A program made the translations under genes and the position numbers. 64,000 nucleotides of DNA from positions 1,488,001 to 1,552,000 of the forward strand of contig LSRY02000007.1 of assembly GCA_001643675.2 (NCBI GenBank), written 5' to 3'. This document shows, in pieces, positions 19,340 through 61,900 of the stretch; the first letter of the stretch is position 1, and the number at the start of each line of letters is the position of its first letter. Source of the stretch: Monocercomonoides exilis PA203 (Eukaryota > Protista > Preaxostyla). A model generated the notes under the pieces. The model was given only the letters and a program-made list of their open reading frames with translations. It ran no database searches and was not told the DNA's origin.

Positions 19340-22300
19340 ATGGTGAGACGCTCCACCAGCGCAAAAGCTGCGTTCAATATTGCTGCATTGCTGTTGCTTT
19401 GTGTAAGATGCCTTAATGTTGAAGGTAACGTCAATGCACAAATTCTGCAAAAAAGGAGCGAGGAGATCCGGAACAGCATGTTGAGCAATGCACACGAAAA
19501 TGCCAAACGTAACAACAATTTTTCTATTCAGAGGGAAACGATTGGGAGCGCAGCTGACAATTGCATCTGCTGTGTTCAAACAAGTCTCAAAATCATCAAC
19601 AGCTCGTTGTGTGTGAGCCATCTCACCATGGCGCCTCTCCGTGAATGCACACTCCTCACTTCTCACCACCACTCATCCACCACCATTCGCTCCACCACCT
19701 GCCAGATCCACTCCCGCCACAACCACAAACACCACCCACTTTTCCTCTCTGCCCACAGCTACCTCGCCCTCACAAACTTCTCTCTCCAAATCCCTCAGCC
19801 AGCATTCCTCTCCTTCCCCCTCTTCTCCTTCCCTCCAAATTCCCTCTCTTCCGCTCACTCCCCAATCCCCTCCTTTTTCTCCATCTCCCATTCTTCCTTC
19901 TCCTCATTCATCTCCCTCATTCAGCCCTTCCTTTTTTCTCCTTCTTCCATTTCTCCTTCTTCTTCCCTTATTCATCTCCATCTCTCACACACACTCTTCA
20001 CCAACATCACCGCTGCACCACAATCCACACACACCATTCCTGCCATTCACACACACTCACACAACTCATTCACCGCAACAACCACCACAAACTCAAACAC
20101 AAACACCCATGCGAACACCCACATAATTCCCTCCTTTTCTCTTCATTTTTCCCTCTCCGTCCACTCATCCATCTTCCTCCACACTCACAACCCCATCGAT
20201 GGTGCCATTCTCCCCAACCTCAACAGCCCCTCCACTTCTCTCTCTGCCTTCAACTCCTCTTTTCTTCACCAAACACGTTCTTCACCAAATGATCTTATAA
20301 AGTGTAATGGATCCGAAGCTCAAAAATTAAAACTAGAAAGAAACTCCTCATTCAATCTGAATAGCTATCTCTTTGAATGGTGTGAATGGGAAAATACAAC
20401 TGGTGGGTCAAATCATGGAGGTGCACTTTATGTTGTTTGTTCAAATGCTAATCTCACAATTACTTCTTGTTCATTTTCAAAATGCGCAAGCAATGACCAT
20501 GGTGGAGCGTTATATAGTGAATGGTTGTTAAATGTCAATATCGCAAAATCCAATTTCACAAATTGTTCTGCGGCTCGTGGAGGAGCCGCTTATATCGGGT
20601 ATCCTCAATCAAATTCTGTTCGTGCATTCTCAGAAAACAGAGTGGAAAGTTGCAAAATAACAAGCAGTATTGGAACCGGTTGGTTTTTTGGACTAAATTA
20701 TAATCCAACAACTGTTCAATTTCAGTTTTCCAAAAGCAAGTGCATTTCAAATTCTGGTGGAGATTCTGCTGGATCTTTAACACTCAATAATCCTCCTTCT
20801 TCGAAGCCAATTCAGTTTTCAATCGTTGAGAATCAGTTTATCAATAACATGTTGAATGCTTCTTCTTCATTTGGAGGTGCTGCCATTTACTGTTATGCAA
20901 CTTATTCCTGGATGAATGGAATTAAATTCATCACGTTCTGCTTCTTCGATGGCAATACTGCCACAAATGGAAGAGGGAATGATGTGTTCTTCAACGGAAG
21001 TGATATCACCCAATCTCCTTTTGAAAATTGTGGCTCAACAACTCCATCAAAAAGAGTATGGAATGCTGGAACAGCTGATAACGCCAATTTCAATGGCTGG
21101 CTCCCATTTGTAATGCCAAATAAAATAGTTGCCAACAGCGGATCAGATATTGATGCCTGCGGCGAAGCAAATAAGCCATGTGCTACCATTGAGTATGCCC
21201 TCTATGGATTTGGTTTTTTCAAAGAAGCTTCACTTATCCTCCTCCACTCCACATTCACTCCAACTCAGACACTCACTTTCAATGCCCCAAATACAATAAT
21301 CACCGGAAATGGTACAACTGCCCCCACCATCGCCTCCAGTGGCATTCCCCAACCAACTTCTTCATCCTCTCCCTCATCATCGACATCTTCTTCACCAGAT
21401 CCATCTGCCTCGTCTGCCCTCTTCCAACAGACCCAGGGCTCCCTCACAGTCTCTGCCCTCGCCATCGCCCACAACTCCACAAACACTATCACCCCCATCC
21501 TCTTCCACCTCTCCGATAACTCCCCTTCCCTCAACCTCAACACAACCACCATCACCGGAACAACCTCCATAACAATAAAAACTCCCCTCTTCTTCCTCAC
21601 TGCTGGCTCCCTCGCCCTCAACCACACAGCAATCACCAGTCTCACCCTCAGCAGCCAGAGCATCTTCCACCTCACCTCCCTCACAAATCCCCTCACCATC
21701 AACTCCTCCAACATCACCCACATCACCTCCACAGCCACTCCAGCCAGCTGTGTCCTCTCCTCTGCCACCTCCCCTGCCCTCTCCCTCTCCCTCACCAACT
21801 GCACCATGACCAACATCAACTCAGAACAGTTGAACCAACAGACTGCCACCGATGGCGGGTGCATCTCATTCGCCTCATCTGCCTCTGACAATACGTTTTC
21901 AGTGAGCAACACCATCTTCTCCAGCTGCTGTGTGAGCGAGGATACAAATTCTGGAGGAAGAGGCGGTGCTCTCATGATCGAGTTCAATGAAGGCTCACAA
22001 TTGTCAGAATCCTCCTTTTCCGTTACAAATGTGATGTTTTCAGGCAACAAGGCGAGTGTCGGAAGAGATATGTATTTTGTGTGCGAATCATTTGTCGCTT
22101 CTGTGAAAGAGCCCTTGTTCGCCTTCATGAAAAGCATCACGCAGAAAGACAACTCGATTGTTGGACATGACAGAACAGAGGAATTCGGAGATTGGGATGT
22201 GGACTTGTTCATATTTCTGGACGGATATAAAGCTGACAAGGTGTTTATCGATGGAACATCTGGGATCGAGGTATTGTATTGTGGGATTGAAAAGGTGCCA

Positions 22301-25300
22301 TGCAAGAGTGTGGACTATGGGGCAGGGCATCTGAAGAGAGCACAGAACATAATAGAAGAAATTGTTGTGTGTTCGAAATCGACAGTAGCTGGATGTTTGG
22401 ATGTGGGAAGAGTGCTTATAAAAGCAAAAACTGAGACAATTGTGGAGATTGAATGCCAAAGAGAAGCGAGTGGGTCCGAAGAATCCATTCTGAAGACAGA
22501 ATCACTGACAGAAATGGAGTTCATTGGGATTGTTGTTCCATCGAATTTTGAGAGGACAATCACATCAGTGATCGGATCAAGCACTCAAAATGGGGAGTTG
22601 CACATGAAGAACTGCATGATGAGTGTGGTTGGAGGGAAGGAAAACACAATTGAATTTTCCTTGATCAAATCGACAGGGAAGATGGTTGAACTGGAGTTTG
22701 TGACGATTTCAGAAGTGAAATCATCTGTCTCGCTGTTTTCATTTTCACTTTTCTCATCAAATGTGAATGAAGGAGAAAGTGAAGAAAAATGCAAAGTGAA
22801 ACTGTTGAATTGTTCAATGGAAGGATGCAGTTTTGCAGAGCGTTCATTTGGTGAATCTCCATTGATGATATCTTCTTCTGTTTTGTTTGAAAACAGCAAC
22901 TTTTCAAATATTGAGAACACGGGCAGTGGAGAAGGAGGTGTTGCAAGAGTCACATTAATAAATGACGAAGTTTTGGTTATTAAATCAACAAATGCGTCAT
23001 CTTGTTCGCTTTCATCGAACAATGGAAAAGGAGGGTTTTTGTATTTGGATTGCCAAAATTGTTTGGAAGAAAAGCCTTTTCTTTTGGAAACAGCTTCGTT
23101 TATGAACAACAAAGCTTCCATTGGAAAAAACGTGTTCATTTTGGGAAAGGATTTGAATAGTTCTGTGACAAATAATTCATTCAAATTTGATTATTCCTCA
23201 ATGATAAATGACAGCAATTTGTTTGTTGGAGGCGATAGCTTTCATTCAAACAAAGATTTATTCATGTTCCTCGTTCCATACAGCTCGTTTGAGATATTTA
23301 TCTCATCGAGTGGATTTGATGTTGCAAGATGTGGAAGTGAAGAAGAGCCATGCAAAACGGTGTGGAAAGGGATGGAAAACATGGAAAAGGGAACTGGAAA
23401 TAAAACTATTCAGGTTGAAGGATCAACTGTTATTCGAGATTCATTCAGTATGTCCAATTATCAGATCAAAAAGAGTGTGAAGATGGGAGAAGAGAATGTG
23501 AAAGCAACTTTGAATTTTGAAAAGGCAATTGGAAGCCAACCGGAATATTTCATGGTAAATGATATTCATCTTGAATTGACAAATATCCAACTGAAACTGT
23601 CAACTGGATTTGACAATTCAGCCAAAACAATGATTTCAAACAGAAAAGGTGAGTTGACAATTACTGGATGTTCATTCCATTCAGAAGCGGGAGTGAACAA
23701 TGGGTTCAATTGCGTATTTGTGGATGCAGTTGGAGGAACTGTAGATGTGAATGATTTGACGATGGAATCATGCAATGTTGGAAACAGCATTTTTGCCATT
23801 CACGATGCTGGAGTTTCAGTCCATTTGGTGAATGTTCGAGTGAAATCGTTGAATGAAAGCGGAGGTTGCTTTTTGTCAATCAAGAAATCCGAACCAGGAT
23901 TGAAGACAAATGAAGGAGAAAATGAAGAATGTGAAAATATTGAGATTGACAATTCATCATTTTCAGGAGTGAAGAGAAGCGATAATGGAGCAAGCATTTT
24001 GGAGTCAAAGAGCGATAAAAAGATTTGTTTGGTTGTGAATTCGAGCAACATCACAGAAGACAAAGCAGAAATAAGTGAAAAAGGAGGGGCGATCTTTTTC
24101 ACATTGGGTGCATCTGGCTCAATGAAGATGGTTTACTCAACAATCAGCCATTGCAGCTGCAACGACAGCACGGGAAGAGGTGGAGGGGTGTTTTTGGCAA
24201 CAAAGGAAAGAGGAGAATTGTATTTTTCATTTGTGGGGATGAAGTTCAGTGCAAACACAGCAAGTGTGGGGAATGATATTTTCATTGAGTGTTTCAACAT
24301 CACATCTCAGATCAATGAAATGCAATTTCGGTTTGATCTTCGAGAGAATCATTATTCGCGAATTAATGCAATATATGGAAGAGATTCATGCGATTATTCA
24401 AGCGACACTGATCTTATTGATTTTGTGACAATTCATCAGGGTGACACGATCATTGTGAGCAGTGTGAATGGATCGAATGAGAGGCAATGTGGAGCAAGCA
24501 CACTTCCATGTTATTCAGTTGATTATGGGTTGATGCATCTAACTTCAGATTTCATGAGTGTTATGATTGTTGTTGAAGAGAGTGTGATTGGTGATGAGAT
24601 TAATCTGAAGGAGATGAGTTTGAGTTCGAAGAGCAGAGAAAATTGTGAAGTTGAAGTGAAATCAGGAATGACAAGAACAAGAGAGGCATTGGTGATGACA
24701 ACAGGAACAGTTTCATTGGTGAGAGTGAACTTTGTGTTTGATTCAAATTTTGCTTCCACACATGATTCACTGATCTCACCAGAGGGAGGGATTCTTGAAG
24801 TGATGAATTGCTTGTTCACAACAAAACAATTGATAGAAGGAGTTAATGCAGAATTTACAAATATTCAATTCCACATAATAAAAATGGCAAAAGGAGAATT
24901 ACAACTTGATGGATGCTCAATATCAAATCTTATTCTTCAAAAATCTTCAATATATCTATCATCATCACTTCCATCAGTGATTTATTTGTTTGAGATATTC
25001 AATTCAACAATTAAAACTTCTCTGATTGATATTAATGAATGCGGGCAATTAACAATCAAGGATTTCAACACAGAAAATATCACAGTTGAAGGAAATGGAG
25101 AATCACTGATATCTTGCTTGTCAATGAAAAAGACGATGCAATTGACAAATTGCACAATAGGCGGAGTCGGTTCAAAGACCAAAAAAGGGAAATTGATGAA
25201 ATTGGAGAATTGTTTGGATGTGAAAACGGATAGTTGCATTTTTGATGGAAGTTTAAAGGAAAGAAATGAGAAGCAGTTGAATATTGAAGAAGAGAAGTGC

Positions 25301-27253
25301 AGATGGGATGGATCTCTTGTTGATGTTGTGAAGAGTTCTGTTTTGATGAAAGACATAACAATATCGAATTCACCAGAAGGTGGAATAACAATGAGTGGAG
25401 GGGAAATGACTGTTAATGAGGGAAGATTTGAGAACAATAATCCATCCATTGAAGGATATCCATCACTGAGAAGGAATATCATCTGTTCAGACTCAGGAAC
25501 ATTGAATGTGATGAGTTTGAAAGGAGGAGATGGATGGAAGGATAATACTTCTTTTTGGATGTTGAATGAAGGATGCAGTTTTGAAGGGATAGCTTCAGAA
25601 AGGGATTCATCATTTTTCATTCCTGTATTAGAGAGTGTGGAAGCAAAAGAAGAAACAGATAGAATGAAACTGACATTCAAAGGGATGCTTCTTATTCCAT
25701 GTAATCTGTCATTCGCAGTTGTGAAGAGGAAAGGAGAAGAGAAAGAGATTGAACATTATGATTTTGATTCAAATGGGTTTTTATCCGAAAGAGAAGTTGA
25801 AGGGAGTGTGGCAAAAGATCTCATCAGCAGTTGTGGAAATGAAATAGAGGTGAGTGTTTCTATTTTGTTTGGAAACTCAAATTCTCCATCATCAACCAAT
25901 TCATTCATTTTGAAGAATGCGAGCATCACTCAGCCAAAAGGAGATGAAAGAATAACTGAAAGTGGGAACGAAGAAAAATCATCATGGGCATTGATTGTGA
26001 TTGTGATATTTGCAATAATGTTTTTGATTGTTCTGATTGTATCAATTATCTTCATTGTTCGATGGAGGAAGGTGAAGAATGAAGCAGAAGATCTGAGAGA
26101 GATTGTGAATGACAACATCAGAAAAGATCCGAAAGCGTTTGAGATGGTGACAATGGAGATGTCTCCTGAGGAGCAGTGGATGAGAGCAGAGAGGGAAGGA
26201 GAGAAGAAGAACGAAGAAAGGATCAAGAAGAGGGTCTATGATTCGAATATGGAACATTCAGAGTCATCGGAGCATCTTCTATCTGAGAGTGGATCGACAG
26301 AATATATTTTGGGAAGAGATTCAGACAAGATCCCTGATTGGGTGTTGGAGAAGGTTGATGAGAAAGAAGGAGATGATGCTTCAAGAAAGAGATCGCCTTC
26401 ACCTTCCATTTCATCAACTTGTTCAACTGATTCAGATTCAACTTTTGTTCGTGGAGAAGATCTGTGCCCGACCACCTCATCGATGTCGAATCTGGTGGAT
26501 GCAATGGCCTGCTCATCGCCTCATGAGAAACTGATTGTGGATCTGCGAGATTCTCTGTTCATGTTGTTGCACGGAAGGAACGAGAAGAAGGAGATGGCGA
26601 TAGGCACATTGACTGAGAGAGAGCACACAGCTGCACAGGTGTTGTTTTGGGTGGCGAATGGGGCTCTCCATTCATTTGATGAGATGGAAAACCCACTTCA
26701 GACATTATCCAGTTTGAGTCCCCACATTGTATTGTTCTCTGAGCACATGGTCATCTGCATTGTCATGCATTCAGACTTCTTGTCTGATGATGATTCGGAT
26801 TCTTCTTCCATCTCATCTTCAACCATTGCGACATCTGCAAGTGATGATGAAAGTGACTCATTGCCCTCATCTGCGTTTGAGGACGAGGATGACAATTTCA
26901 AAAAAGAGTGTCTGAGATGGAAGGCGCCTGAGCTGCTGATGAACAAGAAGAGGGAAGCAACGAAGGAGTCGGTGGCATTCTCGATTGGGATGATGCTGTG
27001 GGAGTGCCTGACGCTTCATGTTCCGTTTGGGGAGTATGAGGCAGAAATTGCTGGACAGAAGATTGTGAATGGGGAGCGTCCGAATATTGGGGTTGTTGAG
27101 TGCGAGTGGGGAAGAGAGTTTGTGAAGAAGTGTGTGCTGGGGGATTTGACAGAGAGGCCGACGCTGACAGATGTGAAGCGGTGGCTGATTGGGCACTTTC
27201 CAGAAGAAGCAATAATTGTGACAGCAACAGATGCAATATTCACCGAAGACTGA
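19340..27253 (+). CDS. Giant intronless single-pass receptor A: beta-helix (GGA[I/L]/FxxN, CG..PC) ectodomain, TM helix, degenerate TKL-like pseudokinase
   Basis: 2637 aa ORF with an N-terminal signal-like stretch, repeated GGALY/GRGG..F..N.A..G.D and CG....PC motifs, TM at about 25985-26059, and C-lobe remnants RWKAPEL, FSIGMMLWE and RP. No GxGxxG, HRD or DFG. Confidence 0.85.
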   Translation: MVRRSTSAKAAFNIAALLLLCVRCLNVEGNVNAQILQKRSEEIRNSMLSNAHENAKRNNNFSIQRETIGSAADNCICCVQTSLKIINSSLCVSHLTMAPLRECTLLTSHHHSSTTIRSTTCQIHSRHNHKHHPLFLSAHSYLALTNFSLQIPQPAFLSFPLFSFPPNSLSSAHSPIPSFFSISHSSFSSFISLIQPFLFSPSSISPSSSLIHLHLSHTLFTNITAAPQSTHTIPAIHTHSHNSFTATTTTNSNTNTHANTHIIPSFSLHFSLSVHSSIFLHTHNPIDGAILPNLNSPSTSLSAFNSSFLHQTRSSPNDLIKCNGSEAQKLKLERNSSFNLNSYLFEWCEWENTTGGSNHGGALYVVCSNANLTITSCSFSKCASNDHGGALYSEWLLNVNIAKSNFTNCSAARGGAAYIGYPQSNSVRAFSENRVESCKITSSIGTGWFFGLNYNPTTVQFQFSKSKCISNSGGDSAGSLTLNNPPSSKPIQFSIVENQFINNMLNASSSFGGAAIYCYATYSWMNGIKFITFCFFDGNTATNGRGNDVFFNGSDITQSPFENCGSTTPSKRVWNAGTADNANFNGWLPFVMPNKIVANSGSDIDACGEANKPCATIEYALYGFGFFKEASLILLHSTFTPTQTLTFNAPNTIITGNGTTAPTIASSGIPQPTSSSSPSSSTSSSPDPSASSALFQQTQGSLTVSALAIAHNSTNTITPILFHLSDNSPSLNLNTTTITGTTSITIKTPLFFLTAGSLALNHTAITSLTLSSQSIFHLTSLTNPLTINSSNITHITSTATPASCVLSSATSPALSLSLTNCTMTNINSEQLNQQTATDGGCISFASSASDNTFSVSNTIFSSCCVSEDTNSGGRGGALMIEFNEGSQLSESSFSVTNVMFSGNKASVGRDMYFVCESFVASVKEPLFAFMKSITQKDNSIVGHDRTEEFGDWDVDLFIFLDGYKADKVFIDGTSGIEVLYCGIEKVPCKSVDYGAGHLKRAQNIIEEIVVCSKSTVAGCLDVGRVLIKAKTETIVEIECQREASGSEESILKTESLTEMEFIGIVVPSNFERTITSVIGSSTQNGELHMKNCMMSVVGGKENTIEFSLIKSTGKMVELEFVTISEVKSSVSLFSFSLFSSNVNEGESEEKCKVKLLNCSMEGCSFAERSFGESPLMISSSVLFENSNFSNIENTGSGEGGVARVTLINDEVLVIKSTNASSCSLSSNNGKGGFLYLDCQNCLEEKPFLLETASFMNNKASIGKNVFILGKDLNSSVTNNSFKFDYSSMINDSNLFVGGDSFHSNKDLFMFLVPYSSFEIFISSSGFDVARCGSEEEPCKTVWKGMENMEKGTGNKTIQVEGSTVIRDSFSMSNYQIKKSVKMGEENVKATLNFEKAIGSQPEYFMVNDIHLELTNIQLKLSTGFDNSAKTMISNRKGELTITGCSFHSEAGVNNGFNCVFVDAVGGTVDVNDLTMESCNVGNSIFAIHDAGVSVHLVNVRVKSLNESGGCFLSIKKSEPGLKTNEGENEECENIEIDNSSFSGVKRSDNGASILESKSDKKICLVVNSSNITEDKAEISEKGGAIFFTLGASGSMKMVYSTISHCSCNDSTGRGGGVFLATKERGELYFSFVGMKFSANTASVGNDIFIECFNITSQINEMQFRFDLRENHYSRINAIYGRDSCDYSSDTDLIDFVTIHQGDTIIVSSVNGSNERQCGASTLPCYSVDYGLMHLTSDFMSVMIVVEESVIGDEINLKEMSLSSKSRENCEVEVKSGMTRTREALVMTTGTVSLVRVNFVFDSNFASTHDSLISPEGGILEVMNCLFTTKQLIEGVNAEFTNIQFHIIKMAKGELQLDGCSISNLILQKSSIYLSSSLPSVIYLFEIFNSTIKTSLIDINECGQLTIKDFNTENITVEGNGESLISCLSMKKTMQLTNCTIGGVGSKTKKGKLMKLENCLDVKTDSCIFDGSLKERNEKQLNIEEEKCRWDGSLVDVVKSSVLMKDITISNSPEGGITMSGGEMTVNEGRFENNNPSIEGYPSLRRNIICSDSGTLNVMSLKGGDGWKDNTSFWMLNEGCSFEGIASERDSSFFIPVLESVEAKEETDRMKLTFKGMLLIPCNLSFAVVKRKGEEKEIEHYDFDSNGFLSEREVEGSVAKDLISSCGNEIEVSVSILFGNSNSPSSTNSFILKNASITQPKGDERITESGNEEKSSWALIVIVIFAIMFLIVLIVSIIFIVRWRKVKNEAEDLREIVNDNIRKDPKAFEMVTMEMSPEEQWMRAEREGEKKNEERIKKRVYDSNMEHSESSEHLLSESGSTEYILGRDSDKIPDWVLEKVDEKEGDDASRKRSPSPSISSTCSTDSDSTFVRGEDLCPTTSSMSNLVDAMACSSPHEKLIVDLRDSLFMLLHGRNEKKEMAIGTLTEREHTAAQVLFWVANGALHSFDEMENPLQTLSSLSPHIVLFSEHMVICIVMHSDFLSDDDSDSSSISSSTIATSASDDESDSLPSSAFEDEDDNFKKECLRWKAPELLMNKKREATKESVAFSIGMMLWECLTLHVPFGEYEAEIAGQKIVNGERPNIGVVECEWGREFVKKCVLGDLTERPTLTDVKRWLIGHFPEEAIIVTATDAIFTED

Positions 27254-49346: not shown

Positions 49347-50040
49347 TCTTTTTTTCATCGGCATTTTTTGCGAATATTGTGTTTTTTGTCTTCATAATTA
49401 TAGAAATAATTTATTGATTATTTTAAAATAATTCTTTTCGTGTTATTTTTAAGTTGCAATATGGAAAAACCATTTCATGGGATATACATTCAACAATAGC
49501 ATAACTCATCAAATCCATATTTTTATGTAATTGTCTTTTTGCATAATCTTCGCAATACACATTTTTTTTAGTTGTTGCATATGAGTAGGAATTTTATGCT
49601 TTGTGAATTTTGTTCCAAGCGATATTCACAAGATTTTTTTCAAATTTTTTCCGTTTTCCAGATTTTTTTCGCACGAGAACGAATGATATATAATGATATG
49701 ATAGTAGATAAAAATTTTTTTACATAAAATTGATTTTTTTCCCCCATAAATGCAACATTTTTTTTACTCGTATCATTAGATACAATGCAGATTGAATCAA
49801 ATAATTCAAATTGAAAAAATAATTTATAATTTTGGGGGTCATTTAAAATAACCCCTGTTTATTTGAATTGACTTGCTCATTTTTTTTATTTTCATCCTAT
49901 TTAGAATTAAATGTTCAAAACATGAAAATAGATAACATTAAATTATTAACATAAAAGATTAATATAAAATACAAAAGTTTTTTATGATTCTCTTTTTGCA
50001 AAAATTTTGATCTTTCAATAATCAACTTCGAAAAAATATA

Positions 50041-50436
50041 CAGATATTGCATAAAATACCGGACATCGCACAAAATACCGGACAAGATCCATTTCACAAT
50101 AACTGCAAGAGTAATAATTCTGATAATTTTCCTCAAAACACAGCTTGTCAATACAAACTCACATGACATACAAGACTTTCAGGACAGCTTCGCTTGAGCT
50201 CGGAAAAAATATATATTGAAATCTCGGAGAAAAAGAATTTTGAGTTTCTCCGAGAATTATAAAATAATTTTTTCCGAGCTCAAGCGAAGCTGTCCTGAAA
50301 GTCTTGTATGTCATGTGAGTTTGTATTGACAAGCTGTGTTTTGAGGAAAATTATCAGAATTATTACTCTTGCAGTTATTGTGAAATGGATCTTGTCCGGT
50401 ATTTTGTGCGATGTCCGGTATTTTATGCGATATCTG
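50041..50436. mobile_element. Foldback MITE, Tc1/mariner-like (family F1, near-perfect arms)
   Basis: TA|CAG...CTG|TA ends; about 190 bp arms and a 12 nt loop; two tandem ATCGCAyAAAATACCGGAC units per end. Confidence 0.9.
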
Positions 50437-50756
50437 TAATAATTCGATAATTCGTTTGAAATGCTATTCAAACTAATGTTATCAAATACATGAGTTATAT
50501 AACGCGAGTAAGTATGGTTTTAACAATTAAAAATTCATTTTTTCCAATATACAAATCATAAATGCTTCTGAAAACTTTTGGTTTATTTCTTCACAATTGC
50601 AAACAATTTCTTTAAAAATGAAGCACCAACAACAGCTTTTGTGCCATTTTGATCAGTTCTCATTGGATAATAACTGCTTTTTTCGTTTTTAGCAACAGCA
50701 ATTTTAAAACAATATTGTTTTTCATTTTTCGCCTTATTGTTGAACAACATTATGAA

Positions 50757-51003
50757 ATATGTCTAAATTTTTTTTAAAAGTTCCGTTTGTTTCATTTTCA
50801 AATAAAATTAAATTTTCATATTTCGATCAAATTTCTGTTCCCACTTACCTAATTTTGCTGTAATGAAAACAAAATCTTGACAAGATATTGTTTTCATGAC
50901 ACCGAAATTATGTAAGTGGGAACAGAAATTTGATCGAAATATGAAAATTTAATTTTATTTGAAAATGAAACAAACGGAACTTTTCAAAAAAATTTAGACA
51001 TAT
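50757..51003. mobile_element. 247 bp near-perfect palindrome (foldback element) with ATATGT...ACATAT ends
   Basis: Arms mirror around position 50880 with a 1-nt centre. Confidence 0.8.
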
Positions 51004-51149
51004 AAACAAGAAAAATATTAAACACTGAATGAAAAATGTGTATATGGTTCTTTTTCAAAATTTCGTTTTTTTATAAAGAACATTTTGTATTATTTAAAAA
51101 AAATATTTTTCTATATTTATCTTCTTATAAAACCGATCACACATTCTGT

Positions 51150-53062
51150 TTTTTATGCTTTCAATACTTGAAACCTTTGGCTTTTATCTGTTTTAATTTT
51201 TATCCCTCTTCATCCAAATGATAACTCACAAACTCAATTTCTATATCAATTGTGATTGACATTTATTCTCTTGCATCCCCATCAACGGCTTTCACTCCAG
51301 CAAACTCAAAGTCCCATCAACGAATCAATCATCTCTCTCCTCAGCAGATCCGACAAATCCCTCTTTGTCTTCAACACCTCTTTCTTCCAACAAACGCTTT
51401 CTTTATCAAATGCTTCCATGATACACGAAGGATCAGAAAATAACAGAGAAAATTCAGGATGATTTTCTTCATTCGGACTGAACAGCAACAAATTTGAATG
51501 GTGCATATAGAAAAATACAAATAACGGAAATGATTGGTGTGGAGCGCTAAAAATTATTTTGCGAAAATGCCAATCTCACAATCACGTCTTGTTCATTTTA
51601 CAATTACTCGACTTGTAATCATGGAGGAGAATTATTTTGCAGATATTTATAAAATTTCAACATCGAAAAATCCAATTTCACAAATAGTTCTGCTTTGAAT
51701 GGAGGGGCAGCACACATGTTCTATCCGCAATCCAGTTCTGTTTGGGTATTATTTGAAAACAGAGTGGAAAGTTGTTAAATTACAAATTGGTGCGGAACTG
51801 GTTGGTATTTCAGACTCGAAAACATGCCATCAAATGCTCAATTCCTGCTCACCAAATGCAAGTGTATCGCAAATTCTGGTGGAGACTCTTCGGGTTCTTA
51901 AACGTTCAACTGGCCTCCAAGCAACAAACCAGAATATTTTTTGGTAAATGATTGTCAGTTTATAAATAATAAATTGACATCGTCTTCTTCTTATGGAGGT
52001 TCTGCTATGTTTTTCAGAGAAACATATTCTTGGATGAGTTGAACAAAATTAATCTCCTTTTGCTGCTATGATTGTAAAATCGCAACAAATGGCAAAGGCA
52101 ATGATGTATTTTTCATTGACAATGCAATCACCCAATCTCCATTCGAGAATTGTGGTTCAACAACTCCAACACAAAGGGTATGGAATAATGGAACTGCAGA
52201 AAACTCAATGTACAATAGCTGGCTCCCACTTGTAATACCAAACAAAATTGTTGCCAACAGCGGATCAGATGTCGATGCATGTGGAAAAACACAGCAAAAC
52301 CCATGCGCCACCATTGAGTATGCCCTCTATGGATTTGGTTTTTTCAAAGAAGCTTCACTTATCCTCCTCCACTCCACATTCACTCCCACAAAGACTCTCA
52401 CATTCCGTGCCCCAAATACAAAAATCACTGGAAATGGCACAACTGCCACCATCATCGCTTCCAGTGGTATTCCCCAACCAACTTCTTCATCCTCTCCCTC
52501 ATCATCGACATCTTCTTCACCAGATACATCTGCCTTGTCTGCTCTCTTCCAACAAACTCAGGGCTCCCTCACAGTCTCTGCTTTCGCCATCGCACACAAC
52601 TCCACAAATCAAATCACCCCCATCCTCTTCCACCTCTCCGATAACTCCCCTTCCCTCAACCTCAACACAACCACCATCACCGGAACAACCTCCATGACAA
52701 TAAAAGCACACCTCTTCTTCCTCACTGCTGGCTCCCTCTCCCTCAACCACACAGCAATCACCAGTCTCGCCCTCAACGGCCAAAGTATCTTCCACCTCAC
52801 CTCCCTCACAAATCCCCTCACCCTCAACTCCTCCAACATCACCGACATCACCTCCACTGCCACCCCCACCAGCTGTGTCCTCTCCTCTGCCACTTCCCCT
52901 TCCCTCTCCCTCTCCCTCGCCAACTGCACCATCACCAACATCAACTCAGCTCCACAAAACCAACAGACTGCCACCAATGGCGGGTGTATCTCATTCGCAT
53001 CATCTGCCTCCGCCAACACATTTTCGGTGAGTGAATCCATCTTTTCCACCTGCTCTGTGAGC
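51150..53062 (+). pseudogene. Truncated mosaic pseudogene fragment of receptor A ectodomain (homologous to about 20100-21940)
   Basis: The 5' part carries stops and frameshifts but aligns to FEWC..GGAL..GGAA..ENRVESC..GNDVFF. The 3' part is open and close to receptor A (ATIEYALYGFGFFKEASLILLHSTF identical). Homology stops at about 53062 and the ORF runs on into unrelated sequence to 53278. Confidence 0.85.
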
Positions 53063-53948
53063 GAAAGTGAAACGAGTGCTTTAGAAATTGAAGAGCTGAT
53101 AAATATAAAGAAAGAAAAATTCAATGGAAAAAGAAGCAAAGGAGAAAGGAAGAAAAAGTTCTTCTTTGAAAGGAAGTTGGCATTAGAGATTTTACGAGTA
53201 TGTAATATGAAAATGAAGAGAGAAATGATAACGAAAATCAATAAAATGCGTGAAGTGATGAGAAAGAAAGAGGCTTAATTAAGGAAAAAGAGAAAGATCA
53301 TTTTGAAATCATGAGATTTCGACAAAAAAAGAATGATCGAAAACATGAAAGGAAATAAGGAAAAATGAAAAAGGAAAAGGAAATATACCTACGATTCTGC
53401 AACTACAACATCCAAGTGCAATGTTTATTGTGATTATGGATTCTGCATTATGAAACACGAACACGTAACAAATTTATTTTTCAGAATTTACAGAATATCA
53501 TAGTTTTCTTTTTAATATTTAAGCAAAAACTCTTAAAATTATCTTCGAAGAGAATCATTCTTCACACAAAACTCAAAACAAACAACAATTTAACTTTATC
53601 TGCAAATTATAAATTTAACATTTATTTAATTAAAGCGTGTAAACAAGCTTCCATAGAATTATCAAGGTTTGGTCAATAAGACTGTCAAAAAAGGTTTGAT
53701 TATTCTTTTATTTCCACTTTATTGTTGTTAATGTTATTTAATTGTTTTTTTTTTCCTTTCCCACAATAATTATTAATTTGAATGATCTTTTCTAATTTGA
53801 ATTAGGATGATGATTTTATATTTTTGCCCTTTTATTTGAATGAAGTGACCTTAATTCAAATTGACGTAGGTTTATCTATAAAACCTCAATTTATTCAATT
53901 TTCCCAACTTAATCTGCATTGTATCTATTCTATGCTGTGTAAACCTTC

Positions 53949-54964
53949 ATATGTTCAACTTTTTAATGGGACTTTTTTTCTTTATTGGCACTTTCTTTGT
54001 TTTTGCATGCCAATCATTTAAAAAAAGCTAGATGGACCTCAACACTCGGATGTGTATGTTCATATAACAAATACATAAAATTACGGGTTTATTTTTTAAT
54101 TTTCTTTTATTTTTCGTAGAGATATTGCATTTTTTTATTTATTTTGAAGTGACTTTTTTCGGCCGAAGAAGCATTTCACAAATTTTTGAAATTCATTTTT
54201 AAAAACAACTGGCATTATCCTTTTTATATTCAAAATCTTAAGTTTAACAACTTGTTTTTTCTTTATTTTTTCACATTTCATTTTTTTATCAACATGCGAA
54301 CACAAATTTGAAAATTTCTTTGTTATTTAAATGAAGAGTTAAAAATAAAAATGTGATATGAAAAATGCACACTCTTATGAAGAAGTGTGAAAAATGTTGA
54401 ACATTAATATTTTCTATTTTCATCAAACTCATCAAAATGGAATAAGTTTGATCTCAGATCATTCAATGTTGTGACCATTCACCTTTTCAAGATAATAAGA
54501 AAATTTCAATGTTCAACCTTTTTCACACTTCTTTATTAAATCGTGTATTTTTCATATCATATTTTTGTTTTTAACGCTTCATTTAAATAACAAAGAAATT
54601 TTCAAAATTGTGTTCGCATGTTGATAAAAAATTGAAATGTGAAAAAATCTAGAAAAAACATGTTGTTAAACTTAAGATTTTGAATATAAAAAGGATAATG
54701 CCAGTTGTTTTTAAAAATGAATTTCAAAAATTTGTGAAATGCTTCTTCGGCCGAAAAAAGTCACTTCAAAATAAATAAAAAAATGCAATATCTCTACGAA
54801 AAATAAAAGAAAATTAAAAAATAAACCCGTAATTTTATGTATTTGTTATATGAACATACACATCCGAGTGTTGAGGTCCATCTAGCTTTTTTTAAATGAT
54901 TGGCATGCAAAAACAAAGAAAGTGCCAATAAAGAAAAAAAGTCCCATTAAAAAGTTGAACATAT
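53949..54964. mobile_element. 1016 bp long inverted repeat (foldback element) with ATATGT...ACATAT ends
   Basis: Arms of about 465 bp and a spacer of about 80 bp; the outer ~300 bp are identical by eye; no credible ORF. Confidence 0.85.
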
Positions 54965-55945: not shown

Positions 55946-58900
55946 TTAAGTGCAGCTTTCCCCACTTTTGCTGAAACTTGCTCTCGAATTGTTTGCCTTG
56001 CTGTCATCCTCCTGCTCCTCATCAATTATCGCGTCTGACATCGTGAGTGTGACCTCATTCTTCGAGAAGAACTTGATCAGCTCCTTTTTCACATCGCAAA
56101 GCGTTATTCGGTCTCTTCCATGCTGCAGCAAAGCTGCTGCCACCAGCCCTGCCTGCCTGCTCCCCGATATCACACCCATGTTTGGCCTCTCTCCATTCGC
56201 AATCTTCTGCCCTGCTGCATCTCCCTCATACTCTTCAAATGGAATTTTCAGAGATAGGCACTCCCACAGCATCATCCCAACTGAAAACACCACTGACTCC
56301 TTTGTTGCACTCATCTTCTTATTCATCTGCAGTTCTGGCGCCTTCCACCTCAGACACTCTTTTCTGTAGTATCCATCTTCCTCAAATGCAGATGAGGGTG
56401 GTGGGGAATCCTTCCCATTTCTATTCGACGACGAGCAAGCAGACGAAGATGTGATGATGGTGGATGACGATATGGAGGAGGAGGAGGATGAATCATCAGA
56501 AAAGCAGTCCGAGTGGAGAGCGATGGCGATTTCCATATGTTCAGAGAACAGGATGATATGAGGGCTCAGATTCGCCAGAGAAGGAAGATAATATTTATCA
56601 TCCTCAAACGAGTGGAGTGCTCCATGCACCACCCAGAACAGCAGATGTGCCCCTGTCACTTCCCGCTCCATCAGTGACCCAATCGCCATCTCCTTCTTCT
56701 CGTTCTTTCCATGAAGCAGCATGAACAGCGAATCCCTCAGATCCACAATCAGTTTCACGTATGGAGACGAACAGCTCATTGCATCCACCAAGTTTGACAT
56801 CGAAGAGGTGGTCGGGCACAGATCCTCCCCTCGAACAAATGTGGATTCTGTGTCTGACGTATCTGTTGTTGAAGTGGATGAAATAGAAGGTGATGGCGAT
56901 CTCTTTTGAATCTCTTCCTCCCACTCCTTCTCATCCACTTCCTCCAATACCCATTCTGGAATCTTGTCTGAATCTCTCCCAAGGATGTATTCTGTCGAGC
57001 CACTCTCAGATAACAAATGCTCCGATGACTCTGAATGCTCCATATTCGTCTCATACACCCTCTTCTTTATCCTCTCTTCATTCTTCTTCTCTGCCTCCTT
57101 CTCTGCTCTTCTCCACTGCTCTTCTGGTGACATTTCCATCGTCACCATTTCAAATGCCTTCGGATCTTTTCTGATGTTATCATTCACAATCTCTTTGTAT
57201 TTCTTTGCTTCTTCTTTTGACTTTCTCCAACGCACAGCCAGAATAATAGATATAATAAGAACGACTAAAAACAAAACAGCAAAAATGGCAATAGCAATTA
57301 AAGCCCACGATGAAGCAGCTTCAATTCCTTCTTTAACAAGGTTTCCATTTCCCCCCATCTGTCCTGTTCTATTCTTCAGAACAAACTGAGTGGTACAGTG
57401 CTGTGCTCCCTTCTCTCCAAACGCAATCGTCACTGTTACTTCTGCTTCATTTGGCACTGACACGATTGCAGATGATGATATTGATCCCCTCACTTCCTTC
57501 TCTGAGACAAAGTCAGCATCTGAAAATTCATGCCGCTCAACAGCTTCAGCATCCCCAATCCATGTGCTCACTTTGAACGATAACTCGCATGGAATCAGAA
57601 CACTTCCCAAAAACCGAAGCTCCACAACACTTCCCTTCTCCTTGCTCTTGACTTCCTCTAAAACCGGAATAAACAGAGTTGAACTCCTCTCAGATACTAT
57701 TCCTTCAACTCTGCATCCTTCATTCAGAAACCAAAGAGAACTATTGTCCTTCATTCCATCTCCTCCCTTCAAACTCTCGATGTTCACCAACCCTTCACCT
57801 GAGCAGATGATGTTTCGCCTGACAGATGGAAACTTCACAACGCCTGGATTGTTGTTCAAAAACTCTCCCCTTTCAATTCTCACATCACCTCCAGAAACGG
57901 ACATTCCTCCATCTTTCGCATTTTTGATAGTTGTGAAAGACATGACAACAGATGAATCCTCAAAATGGACAACTGATCCATTCCACTCACACATTTCTTT
58001 TCCCGATGCATTCAATTCAGACTCTCTTTCTCCCTCATCTCCACTGAATGTGCACGACTCCAGCTCCACAGCATTGCTTCTTTCACTTCGCAGCATCTTC
58101 CCTTTCTGCTCTCTTGACACACATTTGGCAAACGATATGTTCTGCATGCGCAGACTCCCCAAACAATTCGCAAATAACACTTCTCCCATTCCAGCTGTCA
58201 TTGTGATATTTTCAATCGAACACACAGAAAACACACATTCACATTTATTCCTTGCATCTTCACTTTCTTTCATTTCATTTTCTCCCTCAAAAGCAAATAA
58301 TGCCCCACCATCACACATAACATCTCGGCACTCGCTCTTTTCGATTGCCACCATCTCACAATCCTTTGCTGTTATCAACCCCAATGAGCATTCGAGCGAA
58401 GTCATCACTAATGATGTGCAGCTCAGCCTCGATTTCTGCTCACATGTAATCATTGGAGACGATGATGAAACATGGCTCAATGTTGCATTCTCCAACTCCA
58501 GATAACCCCCTGAGGAAACATACAGCAGCGTTGCATTCATCAAAAACGCATTCTTGTGCTCATTTACCGTTCCGCTGAATGTGCACTTCGTCATTTCTGT
58601 TTTCCCTTGGCCACACTCAACAAAGCGGAAATGATTCCTCAGAGACTCCGAATCCACAACAAAAGATATCCCCCGAAAAACAACAGATTCGATGCACAAC
58701 ACCACACACGGACGAGTACTCTCCAAATGTGTGTTCAGCCGAAGATATGCTGCTTTGGTTGTTCTCGATCTTATTGACGCGTCTGTCACATCCAGCTCAC
58801 CCTTGATGAGCCCTTCCCCAATCACAACAATCTGACTTTCAAAATCGTGTGTGAGGTGGCTAACAGCAAATCCAAGCGATGCACACGGAAGCATCTGCGA

Positions 58901-61900
58901 GCCACAGTTCCTGCTGTCTTCGCTGGCCACTTCTCTGTCTGAGGTTGTGAATATCGTGTCATTCTGATATATCACAATGAATTCAATCAGGTTCACCGGC
59001 TCTCCGCACAGCTCTGTTCGGTCGATCCCATATATCGCATTCAGCCTGTTGTACTTCGATTCCCGCAGATCAAACAGGAACTGTGTCTCGTTGATCTGCT
59101 CCTTGATGCTGTAGCACTCCACAAACAGATCTCTTCCGATGTGTGCAATGTTCGAGTCAAACACAATGCTCTTGAACATCATGTCCAGGTCTCCTGCAAA
59201 CACTGCCCCAACATACGCCCCTCCTCCCCATCCACTTTGAGCCGAGCAGCTGCTCAGTGTGATCGATGTGTCTCTCACATGCAGATATCCTCCTGAGACC
59301 ATGTGAAAATAGATTGCCCCTCCCTTCGGCGAATTGCTGCTCATGCACATCTCAAACACACTCGCATTAACATCCAATGCTGTTGCACTGCTGCTCATCC
59401 CAAGATCAAAAACACATCCATTTCCACCATTATTCGTGATGTTCTTGAATTCGCTTTTGACCAGAGTGATGGCCGATCTTCCATTCCTTTTCTGCACCTC
59501 TCCCACTTGTTTGTCTCGTGTCCCAATGATGCTTCCATCTCTCATTTCAACCATCTCTGCTTTGAATCCCTCCATCACACATTCCACATCCACTGCCACT
59601 TCAAACAGATACTTTCCAATCGATGAGCTCACCACAGACAGTCTTTTCACAATCACACTTCCTCTCATCACAACTGCAAATGAAATCCCGCTGACTTGGG
59701 ATGCTGGCACTTTCATGCTGACTCCACAATCAACCATCTCCAGTTCCTCTCCCTCGCTCACAATCACTCCCCCTCTTTCATTCACAAATCCATCTCTCAC
59801 CACAAATGTGATCCACTCAAACCTCAGTTTCCTTGTGTTTCGCATGCACACATCCACACCCTCATCTCCAGAGCACTCGATGATCAGGCTTGCCGTTGAT
59901 TGCTCCTCGTTTTCAGCACCAGCTGATTTCACCTCGAAGCCTGACAGAATCCCATCCTCCTCATATCTGCACTCTCCAGACACCACAATCGTTTTCTCAT
60001 TAGCCTCAGTCAACAAATGCTCAATGCCATATCTCCAGCTCTGACACGGATCTTCGGCACTTCCACACCGCAACAAGTCATATCCTCCTGCTCCCACATG
60101 CACTGTGCTGCTTCTGAACTCCACCAGAAACCGAATCAGTGATGTTTCCCCGTGGACTGAATCCGCTCCCATCAGATCGTTATCATCACTTTCCATCTCG
60201 CTCAATGAGAGATTGAATGTCTCTGTTGTCACTGTGGTGTTCAGATCCTGGCATCCAACAAACAGATGCTTTCCAATTGCTGCGAGATTTGACAAAAAGA
60301 ATGTGCCGTTCAACGATATGCACTTGGGCTCTGTCGCTTCACTCCCATCAACAAACATCGCTCCTCCTTTCCCATTCCCTGCCTTGCACTCGCATCCTTC
60401 CATCCTGCACCCATCCACTTTTGCACAGTCACTGCTTCCCAGTCTGATGCACATCAGCCCTCCTTCCTTCCCCGTTCTCGATTTCGCTTTTGTGAGTGTG
60501 CAGTTTTCTGCTCTCAGCGAGCCTTGAACTGCAAAGGGTGCATGCGAATGCTCTGTCAGTGAGGTGAAAGAACAGTTTTCAACGATAAACCTGCCTCCCA
60601 TCACTTTCACAATTCCATAATCCGTCAACATTCCACTGCTTTCGCTGATCGAGCAGTGGTTCATCATCAGTTCTGCACTTGTTGAAGAGGAAACAATGAT
60701 CGCCTGGATTGCAGATATCATTGAAGAGGGTATCTGGAAATTAATCAAGCGAAATTCAGATGCTTTTGAATTCACAAACACACCATCAAACACTCCGTTC
60801 TGCAATTCACCTGAAACACGAAGCTCGCATTCTTCTCCTTCAGACAGCGAGGCAACCACAAACGATGACACATCATATCCTCGGTCGATCTCAACCACAT
60901 TCTGGATGTGCAGCTCCCTCTTCTCTGCTCCCTCCAACGTGTTGCTGTACCCGCTCCAAAAAGAATGGCACGGATATGCTTCCTCACCACAGCCCACCAT
61001 ATCGAATCCTTCACTCGACACAACAACAGTTGAAAGATGTGCCTGAACCAGAAACAGCCTCAGATCCACTGGATCCTCAAACCTGGATACGTCCACTCCC
61101 TTCACATCAACAGTGCTCTCATCGCTCCCACTTGTCAACTCAATGCAGAATCTGTCTGAGAGGATGGATGAATTCAGCTCAACACATTCCACAAACATGT
61201 CTTTCCCTACAAATGCATTGTTTTCTTTGAATCCAACACCTCTGAACAGGTAGTTGTTGGCATATCCTTCACTCATTGCAACAAACAGGCATCCTCCATA
61301 TCCTCCTCCAACATCACTCACCCAGCTGCTCATCTGTACGTTTTCTATCCTCAGCTCATTTTCCTCACTCATTTCGCACAACCCAAAACTCCCATTCTTC
61401 GTGCTCGCTCCGCACCCTTCAACCACACATCCATCACTCATTGTCAATCCAGATCCCTTGTTCACAGTGACAATACGCCCATTAATCGCATTCACTGCGC
61501 TCACATTCACTGCTTTGAACTTCCACTTCGCATGACCTCCACTCACAAACAAGCTCGCCTCTCCTGACGAGATTTGCGAGATTGATGTGTTTCGGCATGA
61601 AAACTCTCCTCCCTCACAAAACACAATTCCCCAGCTGCCTCCAAATCCCAATCCAGCAAACTTCACAGAACTCAGCTCAACTGATCCACCGCTCTCTTGC
61701 ACAACCCACCTTCCAACTTCCTCTCTTCCCTCTCCTTCTTCTCCAAACAAACAATTCACAACTGCACATCTTCCTTGGATGATCAACAAAACCGAACTCA
61801 ATGAATTCAAGGCTTGCAAAGCAGAAGCTGAAACAACAGAATTGGAAGTTGTTTCTGTTTCTGAAGTCAGCTTGAAATGCAGTCCTCGCAGAGAAAGCAC

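What the first reader, a model, noticed from the sequence alone, without database searches (positions are those of the whole stretch)
19625..21935. Candidate cassette-exchange system: a receptor module bracketed by two G-depleted patches, with the same unit present as a silent copy between palindromes
Seen: in receptor A a normal-composition beta-helix module (about 20290-21230) lies between two C-rich, G-poor patches (about 19625-20285 and 21235-21925). The fragment at about 51150-53062 begins within the homologue of patch 1, contains a divergent version of the module, and ends where patch 2 ends and receptor A switches to G-rich coding. That fragment is flanked by foldback palindromes (50041-51003 on the left, 53949-54964 on the right). 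Established: silent partial donors sharing flanking homology drive surface-protein variation in trypanosome VSG, Borrelia vls and Neisseria pilS. Inference: the patches could act as homology arms or R-loop-prone switch-like regions for swapping N-terminal modules among this receptor family. Ordinary duplication and decay remains a serious alternative.
Basis: partly seen in the sequence, partly recalled or inferred. Interest (0 to 1): 0.8.

Follow-up and report, generated by a model that had tools for sequence, protein, structure and literature searches.

The report
Transposon-borne receptor head copy, mosaic family
The "silent copy" is the cargo of a jumping gene that once picked up the head of a giant surface-receptor gene of the gut protist Monocercomonoides exilis. 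That head segment has since been repeatedly copied between receptor genes and about 45 such transposon copies, but nothing shows a programmed switching system.

Summary
The sequence features are real. Receptor A (19340-27253) has two C-rich, G-poor stretches around a normal-composition beta-helix module. A 79% identical partial copy lies at 51339-53064, and the palindromes exist.

The reading needs correction:
- **Palindromes:** they belong to three dispersed MITE families.
- **The copy:** it is the cargo of a ~3.5 kb TA-flanked transposon with 17-nt inverted ends (49777-53927, about 45 copies). The capture junction (21939/21940) is the same nucleotide in every copy checked. Its endpoints therefore record one capture, not repeated breakage in the patches.

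The core idea of exchange is supported:
- Module trees interleave transposon copies with full-length genes. Transposon monophyly is rejected (p-AU 4e-47), with no fixed differences.
- Cargo and transposon-backbone distances are uncorrelated.
- A subfamily that is a 100% clade in the 5' part and the tail is rejected in the module and patch 2.
- Tracts up to 197 bp identical sit inside 19-35% diverged modules.

Breakpoints also lie inside the module. The GC skew is the reverse of an R-loop switch region. Flow into transposon copies is supported, but flow out of them is unproven.

The scan noted similar mosaic archives elsewhere in this genome. Verdict: evolutionary ectopic gene conversion, a new variant of a known kind.

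The parts
19340..27253 (+). Receptor A: 2637-aa open frame with a signal-peptide-like start, a beta-helix ectodomain, one transmembrane segment and a kinase-like tail. It belongs to the M. exilis tyrosine-kinase-like receptor family.
   Evidence: The annotated model P0001 starts only at Met504.
19625..20285 (+). Patch 1: C-rich, G-poor, low-complexity coding stretch. It is translated and is subfamily-specific up to about 20145.
   Evidence: Skew. Four-fold sites. Indels among six paralogues are all multiples of 3, and third positions vary most. Subfamily signal.
20290..21230 (+). Hypervariable but length-conserved (941-953 nt) beta-helix head module.
   Evidence: Median pairwise identity 0.66-0.79; pS 0.57, pN 0.21. 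Fold.
21235..21925 (+). Patch 2: C-rich, G-poor coding stretch. Its core (21437-21939) is 0.87-0.94 identical across receptors, the C2 subfamily and transposon copies.
   Evidence: (pS 0.15).
20146..22206 (+). Pooled zone: the part of the receptor in which subfamily relationships disappear.
   Evidence: The within-minus-between subfamily identity gap drops from +0.14 to +0.37 down to about 0 at 20146. It returns at about 22207. AU tests.
49777..53927 (+). One copy of a ~3.5 kb non-autonomous TIR transposon. In the window it is 4151 bp because of two MITE insertions.
   Evidence: Sharp common ends in 16 copies. Arms found at 45 and 51 first-look sites. Terminal pattern: 44 hits against 0 for the control.
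49777..49793 (+). Left terminal inverted repeat, including the flanking TA.
53911..53927 (+). Right terminal inverted repeat, the exact reverse complement of the left one, including the flanking TA.
51217..53064 (+). Transposon cargo, the 'silent copy'. It is the homologue of receptor A residues ~255-867, with 3 in-frame stops in the last 437 codons and a frameshift upstream.
50039..50438 (.). Foldback MITE (194-nt arms) inserted in the transposon's left arm, with a TA duplication.
   Evidence: Empty sites in L031-L033. 1477 first-look candidates genome-wide.
50757..51003 (.). Second foldback MITE (123-nt arms) inserted in the transposon's left arm.
   Evidence: Absent from L031-L033. Other copies exist.
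53949..54964 (.). Foldback element (467-nt arms) lying 21 bp outside the transposon's right end.
   Evidence: At least 20 copies at 84-90% identity on many contigs.

Best explanation
Receptor A is one of more than 120 giant beta-helix receptor-kinase-like genes of Monocercomonoides exilis. Its head has a hypervariable, length-conserved module. A short conserved island at the end of patch 1 lies on one side. A long conserved stretch (patch 2 plus about 270 bp) lies on the other.

The partial copy at 51217-53064 is the cargo of a ~3.5 kb non-autonomous DNA transposon. The transposon has 17-nt terminal inverted repeats and TA flanks. It captured the head segment once and then spread to about 45 sites. 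The palindromes are unrelated MITEs that landed in and beside this copy.

Since then, ectopic (non-allelic) gene conversion has kept copying pieces of the head among full-length receptors, a second subfamily (C2) and the transposon-borne copies. It uses the conserved stretches, and conserved motifs inside the module, as homology. This keeps patch 2 nearly uniform and makes every module a mosaic.

Shown: the transposon, the single capture, the mosaicism and the discordant histories. Inferred: gene conversion as the mechanism, TA as the target duplication, and net flow from intact genes into the transposon copies. It is an evolutionary process, not a demonstrated programmed switch.
For: Transposon:
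- The ends are identical and sharp, and the 17-nt inverted termini are perfect.
- The terminal pattern gives 44 hits against 0 for the control.
- Both arms are dispersed on the same contigs with 1.8-2.0 kb between them.
- Every copy examined carries the head homologue, ending at residue 867.
- The junction falls at the same nucleotide in six copies.

Exchange:
- The IQ-TREE module tree mixes transposon, receptor and C2 rows in starred clades.
- Transposon monophyly is rejected: dlnL 419, p-AU 3.75e-47.
- There are 0 fixed or near-fixed differences and 620 shared polymorphic columns.
- Cargo and backbone distances are uncorrelated (Spearman -0.03). Mean distances are 0.295 for the module, 0.178 for the backbone and 0.116 for patch 2.
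- Subfamily L001-L006 is a 100/100 clade in the 5' part and the tail, but is rejected in the module and patch 2.
- Embedded tracts occur, for example 197 bp with 0 mismatches between a C2 gene and a transposon copy that differ by 19% overall.
- A four-gamete neighbour test on the module gave 0 of 1000 permutations as low as observed.
- Receptor A and the window copy are mutual best matches (0.82-0.94) only across 21056-21436.

Flow into transposon copies:
- They carry a mean of 1.35 stops, against 3.6-4.1 expected for neutral decay at the backbone's divergence. Five of 17 have none.
- pN/pS among transposon copies (0.38) equals that among genes.
- Their private changes look neutral and include 11 stops. 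Receptors have none.
Against: - No reads could be examined, so ongoing exchange in culture, expression and direction of transfer are untested.
- The low synonymous divergence of patch 2 (pS 0.15) could partly reflect constraint or strong compositional bias rather than conversion. The four-gamete test was not significant for patch 2 in transposon copies.
- TA as a target duplication rests on flanks only. No empty site exists for this element, and no autonomous partner was found.
- The subfamily group was chosen from overall BLAST similarity before the trees were built, but not blind to the identity profiles.
- Short-read polishing of a nanopore assembly could blur very similar stretches.
Confidence: 0.74

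Rival explanations
1. Programmed cassette exchange. The G-poor patches would be dedicated recombination or R-loop switch regions. The palindrome-flanked silent copy would be a donor that the cell uses to swap receptor heads, as in VSG, vls or pilS systems.
For: The geometry fits: truncated, start-less copies hold a variable core between conserved ends, and exchange with full genes is real. The patch composition is a DNA-level feature conserved in all 25 genes. One G4 motif on the template strand of patch 2 is conserved in the copy.
Against: - The palindromes are MITEs.
- The copy's ends come from one transposon capture.
- Breakpoints also lie inside the module, and most of patch 1 is outside the pooled zone.
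- The skew is opposite to that of an R-loop-prone sense strand.
- At least 24 of 25 sampled heads are open, and more than 120 long models are annotated. No single expression site is therefore evident.
- The only direction supported is into the silent copies.
Confidence: 0.08
2. Selected but unprogrammed archive. The transposon-borne heads are kept because they serve as donors that feed new module variants into the receptor genes.
For: About 45 copies share all polymorphism with the genes. They carry fewer stops than neutral decay predicts. Near-identical tracts link transposon copies with receptor and C2 genes. Earlier notes of this scan reached a similar reading on other windows; those are leads only.
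Against: Overwriting of transposon copies by intact genes explains every pattern seen. Private changes in the cargo look neutral and include stops. No transfer from a transposon copy into a gene was polarised.
Confidence: 0.13
3. Plain duplication and decay. The fragment is a dead partial duplicate, the family's pattern reflects only different selective constraint along the gene, and there is no exchange.
For: The window copy is broken. Conserved and variable regions are expected in any receptor.
Against: - Segment trees are incongruent.
- Single-origin monophyly of the cargos is rejected.
- The module is more diverged than the transposon backbone that carries it, and the two distances are uncorrelated.
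- Identical tracts of 116-197 bp sit inside modules 19-26% diverged.
Confidence: 0.02
4. Assembly or polishing artefact. The mosaics and the uniform patch 2 arise from cross-mapping of short reads among paralogues during ten rounds of Pilon polishing of the nanopore assembly.
For: The assembly was polished with Nanopolish and ten rounds of Pilon, and the family is highly repetitive (PMC8767320).
Against: Reads cannot cross-map into modules that differ by 20-35%. The deep tree discordance lies in exactly those modules. Patch 2 still differs by about 9% between copies. Nanopore reads (N50 8.9 kb) span the whole unit.
Confidence: 0.03

Closest known systems
Anaplasma msp2/p44 'functional pseudogenes' (also Borrelia vls, Neisseria pilS, mosaic VSG formation, Babesia ves1): segmental gene conversion from truncated donors
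   Same: Truncated, start-less copies carry a hypervariable core between conserved ends. Short segments are copied between copies, giving mosaic genes.
   Different: Here there are more than 120 apparently intact full-length genes rather than one expression site. The copies are dispersed by a transposon rather than held in arrays or at telomeres. No direction, initiating element or machinery is shown. The organism is a gut commensal, not a known immune-evading pathogen.
Pack-type non-autonomous DNA transposons (Pack-MULE, Pack-CACTA of plants) that carry captured host gene fragments
   Same: Terminal inverted repeats, no transposase, an internal host gene fragment with a fixed capture junction, and dozens of dispersed copies.
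   Different: TA flanks and short 17-nt termini suggest a Tc1/mariner- or Stowaway-like element rather than Mutator or CACTA. The cargo has been repeatedly overwritten by paralogous genes after insertion, so cargo and backbone have unrelated histories.
Ectopic recombination in large surface-protein families (Plasmodium var, Giardia VSP, Trichomonas BspA or Pmp-like families)
   Same: A very large family of surface proteins has conserved blocks, hypervariable blocks and mosaic paralogues.
   Different: The ectodomain is a stack of beta-helix units on a kinase-like tail. The variable block is length-conserved. The conserved arms have an extreme C-rich, G-poor synonymous composition.
Merlin-type cargo transposons with receptor pieces noted by this scan elsewhere in the same genome (s1-464124, s1-471158, s1-463782)
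   Same: Same genome, same receptor family captured, and the cargo is said to be overwritten by family members.
   Different: Those notes describe long inverted repeats and 8-bp duplications. This element has 17-nt termini and TA flanks, so it is a different transposon family. The comparison was not tested here.

Membership tests
Programmed gene-conversion variation system (msp2/p44, vls, pilE/pilS, VSG) | Truncated silent donors with a variable core between conserved ends | tested here: met
   Cargo copies lack the start, signal peptide and most of patch 1. They all end at residue 867, and most carry 1-3 stops.
Programmed gene-conversion variation system (msp2/p44, vls, pilE/pilS, VSG) | One or few expression sites, with the remaining copies silent | tested here: inconclusive
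   24 of 25 sampled heads are open and more than 120 long models are annotated. This argues against a single site, but expression could not be examined.
Programmed gene-conversion variation system (msp2/p44, vls, pilE/pilS, VSG) | Directional transfer from donor to expressed gene | tested here: inconclusive
   Only flow into the silent copies is supported: there is a deficit of stops and gene-like pN/pS. No event was polarised.
Programmed gene-conversion variation system (msp2/p44, vls, pilE/pilS, VSG) | Dedicated initiating cis element beside the exchanged unit | tested here: not met
   The flanking palindromes are dispersed MITEs. There is only one canonical G4 motif in patch 2.
R-loop-prone switch-like region (immunoglobulin class-switch type) | G-rich non-template strand in the direction of transcription | tested here: not met
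   The coding strand of both patches is G-poor, with skew -0.6 to -0.9. The G-rich part is the tail.
Pack-type non-autonomous TIR DNA transposon | Terminal inverted repeats at sharp, shared ends | tested here: met
   The 17-nt termini are perfect reverse complements. The ends are aligned in 4 (left) and 15 (right) copies.
Pack-type non-autonomous TIR DNA transposon | Target-site duplication | tested here: inconclusive
   TA abuts both ends in nearly all copies, and no longer duplication is present. No empty site was available, so TA could be part of the terminus.
Pack-type non-autonomous TIR DNA transposon | Many dispersed copies | tested here: met
   45 and 51 first-look sites for the two arms, and 44 terminal-pattern hits against 0 for the control.
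Pack-type non-autonomous TIR DNA transposon | Host gene fragment as cargo, with no transposase | tested here: met
   The cargo is the receptor head. The arms are AT-rich, with no open frame over 84 aa in the window copy.
Pack-type non-autonomous TIR DNA transposon | Autonomous partner with the same termini | tested here: inconclusive
   More than 100 DDE_3 transposase matches exist in the genome, but none lies inside a pair of these termini. No further DNA could be fetched.
M. exilis tyrosine-kinase-like receptor family (largest gene family; PMC6759080, PMC8767320) | Kinase-like C-terminal domain and close paralogues in M. exilis only | tested here: met
   123 hits, all M. exilis, most with PF07714 or PF00069. 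Receptor A itself scores 21.8 bits on Pkinase, below the cut-off.
M. exilis tyrosine-kinase-like receptor family (largest gene family; PMC6759080, PMC8767320) | Beta-helix ectodomain | tested here: met
   AlphaFold2 gives pLDDT 82-92 over the module. The best Foldseek matches are PL6 lyases, tailspikes and antigen 43, but they are weak: E 6e-4 and low TM-score.
MITE (the three palindromes) | Short foldback element, high copy number, insertion with target duplication | tested here: met
   For 50039-50438, the empty sites in L031-L033 show a TA duplication.

The most novel reading that the evidence does not exclude
The C-rich, G-poor arms are sequences that target recombination to the receptor head. 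The ~45 transposon-borne head copies are a mobile donor archive that the cell, or selection, uses to renew its receptor repertoire. This would be an antigenic-variation-like diversification system in a non-pathogenic, mitochondrion-less eukaryote, built on a transposon.
Probability: 0.12. Interest if true: 0.85.

Novelty: new variant of a known kind. Interest (0 to 1): 0.55.

Why it matters
The largest gene family of M. exilis is described in print only as an expanded kinase family that overlaps "unclassified repeats" (PMC6759080, PMC8767320). This analysis explains part of that overlap: a TIR transposon carries the receptor head.

It also shows that a hypervariable head module is shuffled by gene conversion among genes and transposon copies. 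That gives a tractable free-living or commensal model for how surface-receptor diversity is generated. It is a clean example of transposon cargo and backbone having separate histories.

It corrects the gene model of receptor A as well. The annotated model lacks the first 503 residues, which include the signal peptide.

Tried and rejected
- **Reads.** No test of chimeric reads, expression or transcript start was possible, and I did not try another route.
- **More loci.** Left arms of most transposon copies, and possible longer or autonomous copies (for example termini 16 kb apart on C58), could not be read.
- **Pfam on receptor A.** It gave only a sub-threshold kinase hit and nothing for the head.
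- **G-quadruplex idea.** There is only one canonical motif per patch 2.
- **Autonomous partner.** DDE_3 and mariner profiles find many transposases, but none within these termini.
- **Stop in L004.** The stop in close paralogue L004, considered as a trace of transfer from a decayed copy, is a private point change and uninformative.
- **My own boundary idea.** I expected the receptors' pooled zone to end exactly at the cargo junction. It was not upheld: the zone runs to about 22206.
- **FastTree.** The first tree was replaced by IQ-TREE with support values.
- **Singleton rates.** Cargo and backbone rates are not comparable because the sample sizes differ, so I did not use them.
Full report
**Organism and gene**

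The window is contig C69:1488001-1552000 of an 82.3 Mb, 101-contig genome. All 123 protein relatives of the large ORF are from Monocercomonoides exilis. The published nanopore assembly has that same size and contig count (PMC8767320).

Receptor A is an uninterrupted 2637-codon frame at 19340-27253. It has a signal-peptide-like start, a long ectodomain, one hydrophobic segment and a weak kinase match. It belongs to the tyrosine-kinase-like family, which is the largest in this genome (PMC6759080). The annotated model starts only at Met504, whereas paralogue models are 2485-2659 aa.

**Observation**

- The two G-poor patches are real. The coding-strand skew is -0.6 to -0.9, with a module of about zero skew between them and a G-rich tail after about 21940.
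- The bias is present at four-fold synonymous sites: C 0.53-0.60 and G 0.02-0.03 in the patches, against C 0.07 and G 0.25 in the tail. It is therefore a property of the DNA, not only of the amino-acid composition.
- All 25 sampled paralogues show it, with a module length fixed at 941-953 nt.
- Patch 1 is translated. Indels among six close paralogues are all multiples of three, and third positions vary most.
- An AlphaFold2 model of residues 296-880 is confident over the module. It resembles right-handed beta-helix proteins, though weakly.
- The partial copy at 51339-53064 is 79% identical to 20218-21939 and is broken by stops and a frameshift.
- The palindromes exist, but the left one is two separate foldbacks.

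**What the silent copy is**

Each palindrome belongs to a dispersed family. There are 209 first-look candidates for the right one and 1477 for the left one.

Three other loci (L031-L033) align with the window from about 49775 to about 53927. They skip 50039-50438 and 50757-51003, so these two palindromes are later insertions. The first shows a TA duplication against the empty sites.

The aligned unit has sharp ends in every copy examined. The ends are 17-nt perfect inverted repeats abutted by TA. The terminal pattern occurs 44 times in the genome, against 0 for the reversed control.

The two AT-rich arms occur at 45 and 51 first-look sites, on the same contigs, with 1.8-2.0 kb between them. 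Every copy read carries a homologue of the receptor head ending at residue 867. The junction lies between 21939 and 21940, at the same nucleotide in six copies.

The unit is therefore a non-autonomous TIR transposon of about 3.5 kb that captured the head once. The fragment's endpoints are inherited, and are not independent breaks in the patches. No transposase lies in it. No autonomous partner was found, although the genome holds more than 100 DDE_3 matches.

A second class of relatives (C2) shares 20114/20267 to 22308/22428 with receptor A and then continues with its own sequence.

**Evidence for exchange**

1. Among six close paralogues, identity is 0.90-0.97 from the start codon to about 20076. 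It drops to 0.6-0.8 across the module and recovers in patch 2 and the tail. Isolated windows inside the module reach 0.95-1.00.
2. Family-wide, the patch 2 core is the most conserved part of the first 4 kb, at 0.87-0.94. This holds in transposon copies too.
3. Synonymous divergence is 0.57 in the module and 0.15 in the patch 2 core. Values are the same for gene-gene, transposon-transposon and mixed pairs.
4. In transposon copies, the module is more diverged (0.295) and patch 2 less diverged (0.116) than the transposon's own backbone (0.178). Cargo and backbone distances are uncorrelated (Spearman -0.03). A 100/100 backbone clade is dissolved in the module tree.
5. The module tree interleaves the three contexts in well-supported clades. 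Monophyly of the cargos is rejected, with dlnL 419 and p-AU 3.75e-47. There are no fixed or near-fixed differences and 620 shared polymorphic columns.
6. Subfamily L001-L006 is a 100/100 clade in the 5' part and in the tail. It is rejected in the module (p 5e-5) and in patch 2 (p 0.001). Its signal vanishes at about 20146 and returns at about 22207.
7. Near-identical tracts lie inside diverged modules. One example is 197 bp with no mismatch between a C2 gene and a transposon copy. Another is 80 bp with no mismatch between the window copy and receptor L005.
8. A four-gamete neighbour test is significant for the module, with 0 of 1000 permutations.
9. Receptor A and the window copy, 30 kb apart, are mutual best matches only across 21056-21436.

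The geometry is right in outline: there is a variable cassette between conserved arms, and partial copies take part in exchange. The details differ.

- The left arm is only the last ~140 bp of patch 1. The rest of patch 1 is subfamily-specific.
- The right arm extends 270 bp into the G-rich tail.
- Many tract ends lie inside the module, with recurrent ends near 21091-21098. That is where the cysteine-rich cap motif of the next beta-helix unit begins, and where two other relatives start to match.
- By inference, the pooled zone corresponds to the first two structural units of the ectodomain rather than to the compositional patches.
- The sense strand is G-poor. By established knowledge of R-loops (favoured by a G-rich non-template strand), this argues against a switch-region analogy.
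- On direction, transposon copies carry far fewer stops than neutral decay at the backbone's divergence predicts (1.35 against 3.6-4.1). Their divergence carries the same pN/pS as genes. Their private changes look neutral and include 11 stops, against none in genes. So intact genes have overwritten the silent copies. Transfer in the other direction is neither shown nor excluded.

**Limits**

The sample is 51 loci.
- Polishing artefacts are conceivable in near-identical stretches, but they cannot explain discordance in 20-35% diverged modules.
- The cause of the C-rich synonymous composition is unexplained. So is the coincidence of the capture junction with the compositional switch.

**Earlier notes of this scan**

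After my main analyses, I found notes on other windows of this genome. They describe about fifty truncated receptor heads trading patches with genes, mosaic receptor paralogues, and Merlin-type cargo transposons.

They agree with my reading and are not independent evidence. The TA-flanked 17-nt-TIR carrier described here appears to be a different element from the Merlin ones, but I did not test that.

**Verdict**

The best explanation is evolutionary ectopic gene conversion in a giant receptor family, with a cargo transposon spreading partial copies that take part in it. This is a new variant of known kinds (Pack-type transposons; mosaic surface-gene families). It does not appear in the two M. 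exilis genome papers I read.

Noticed in passing
window 19340-20848: The annotated protein of receptor A (2134 aa) begins at Met504 inside the head module. The frame is open from 19340 with a signal-peptide-like start, and paralogue models are about 500 residues longer. The model is probably truncated.
   Followed up: partly
window 50039-50438, 50757-51003, 53949-54964: Three foldback MITE families. The first has 1477 first-look candidates genome-wide, and empty sites show a TA duplication.
   Followed up: partly
L034:1-3438 (C10:1590000-1593438): In one C2-subfamily member, about 3.4 kb of 90-bp tandem repeats (70% alike) stands where receptors have patch 1.
   Followed up: no
L020 and L021 (C25:1629678-1636685); L024 and L027 (C25:2120302-2129665): Two inverted pairs of C2-type head copies lie a few kb apart. 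One pair is 99.5% identical over 4.9 kb, which suggests recent inverted duplication or arm-to-arm conversion.
   Followed up: no
L050 (C16:1226463-1230271): Two copies of the cargo transposon abut tail to tail, so their right arms overlap at about C16:1228744-1228771.
   Followed up: no
L004 (C69:1131195-1133663), homologue of window ~20333: A close paralogue of receptor A has a private TAA at codon 338 (TTA in its nearest relative). It is either a young pseudogene or a sequence error.
   Followed up: partly
window 55946-63964 (-): A second giant receptor ORF (over 2672 codons, running to the window's end) shares only the cytoplasmic part with receptor A at the DNA level (72-74%).
   Followed up: no
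window 21771 and 52896: There is one canonical G-quadruplex motif on the template strand of patch 2, conserved in the transposon copy. Only four such C-run motifs occur in the whole window.
   Followed up: no
genome-wide: There are more than 100 matches to the Tc1/IS630-type DDE_3 transposase domain, many in open frames of 420-550 aa. TA-targeting transposons may still be active in this genome.
   Followed up: no
C58:1783809 and C58:1800199; C14:1131964 and ~1140750; C38:581467-591247: Some pairs of the cargo transposon's termini lie 9-16 kb apart. These could be copies with large insertions or longer cargo, but they could not be fetched.
   Followed up: no
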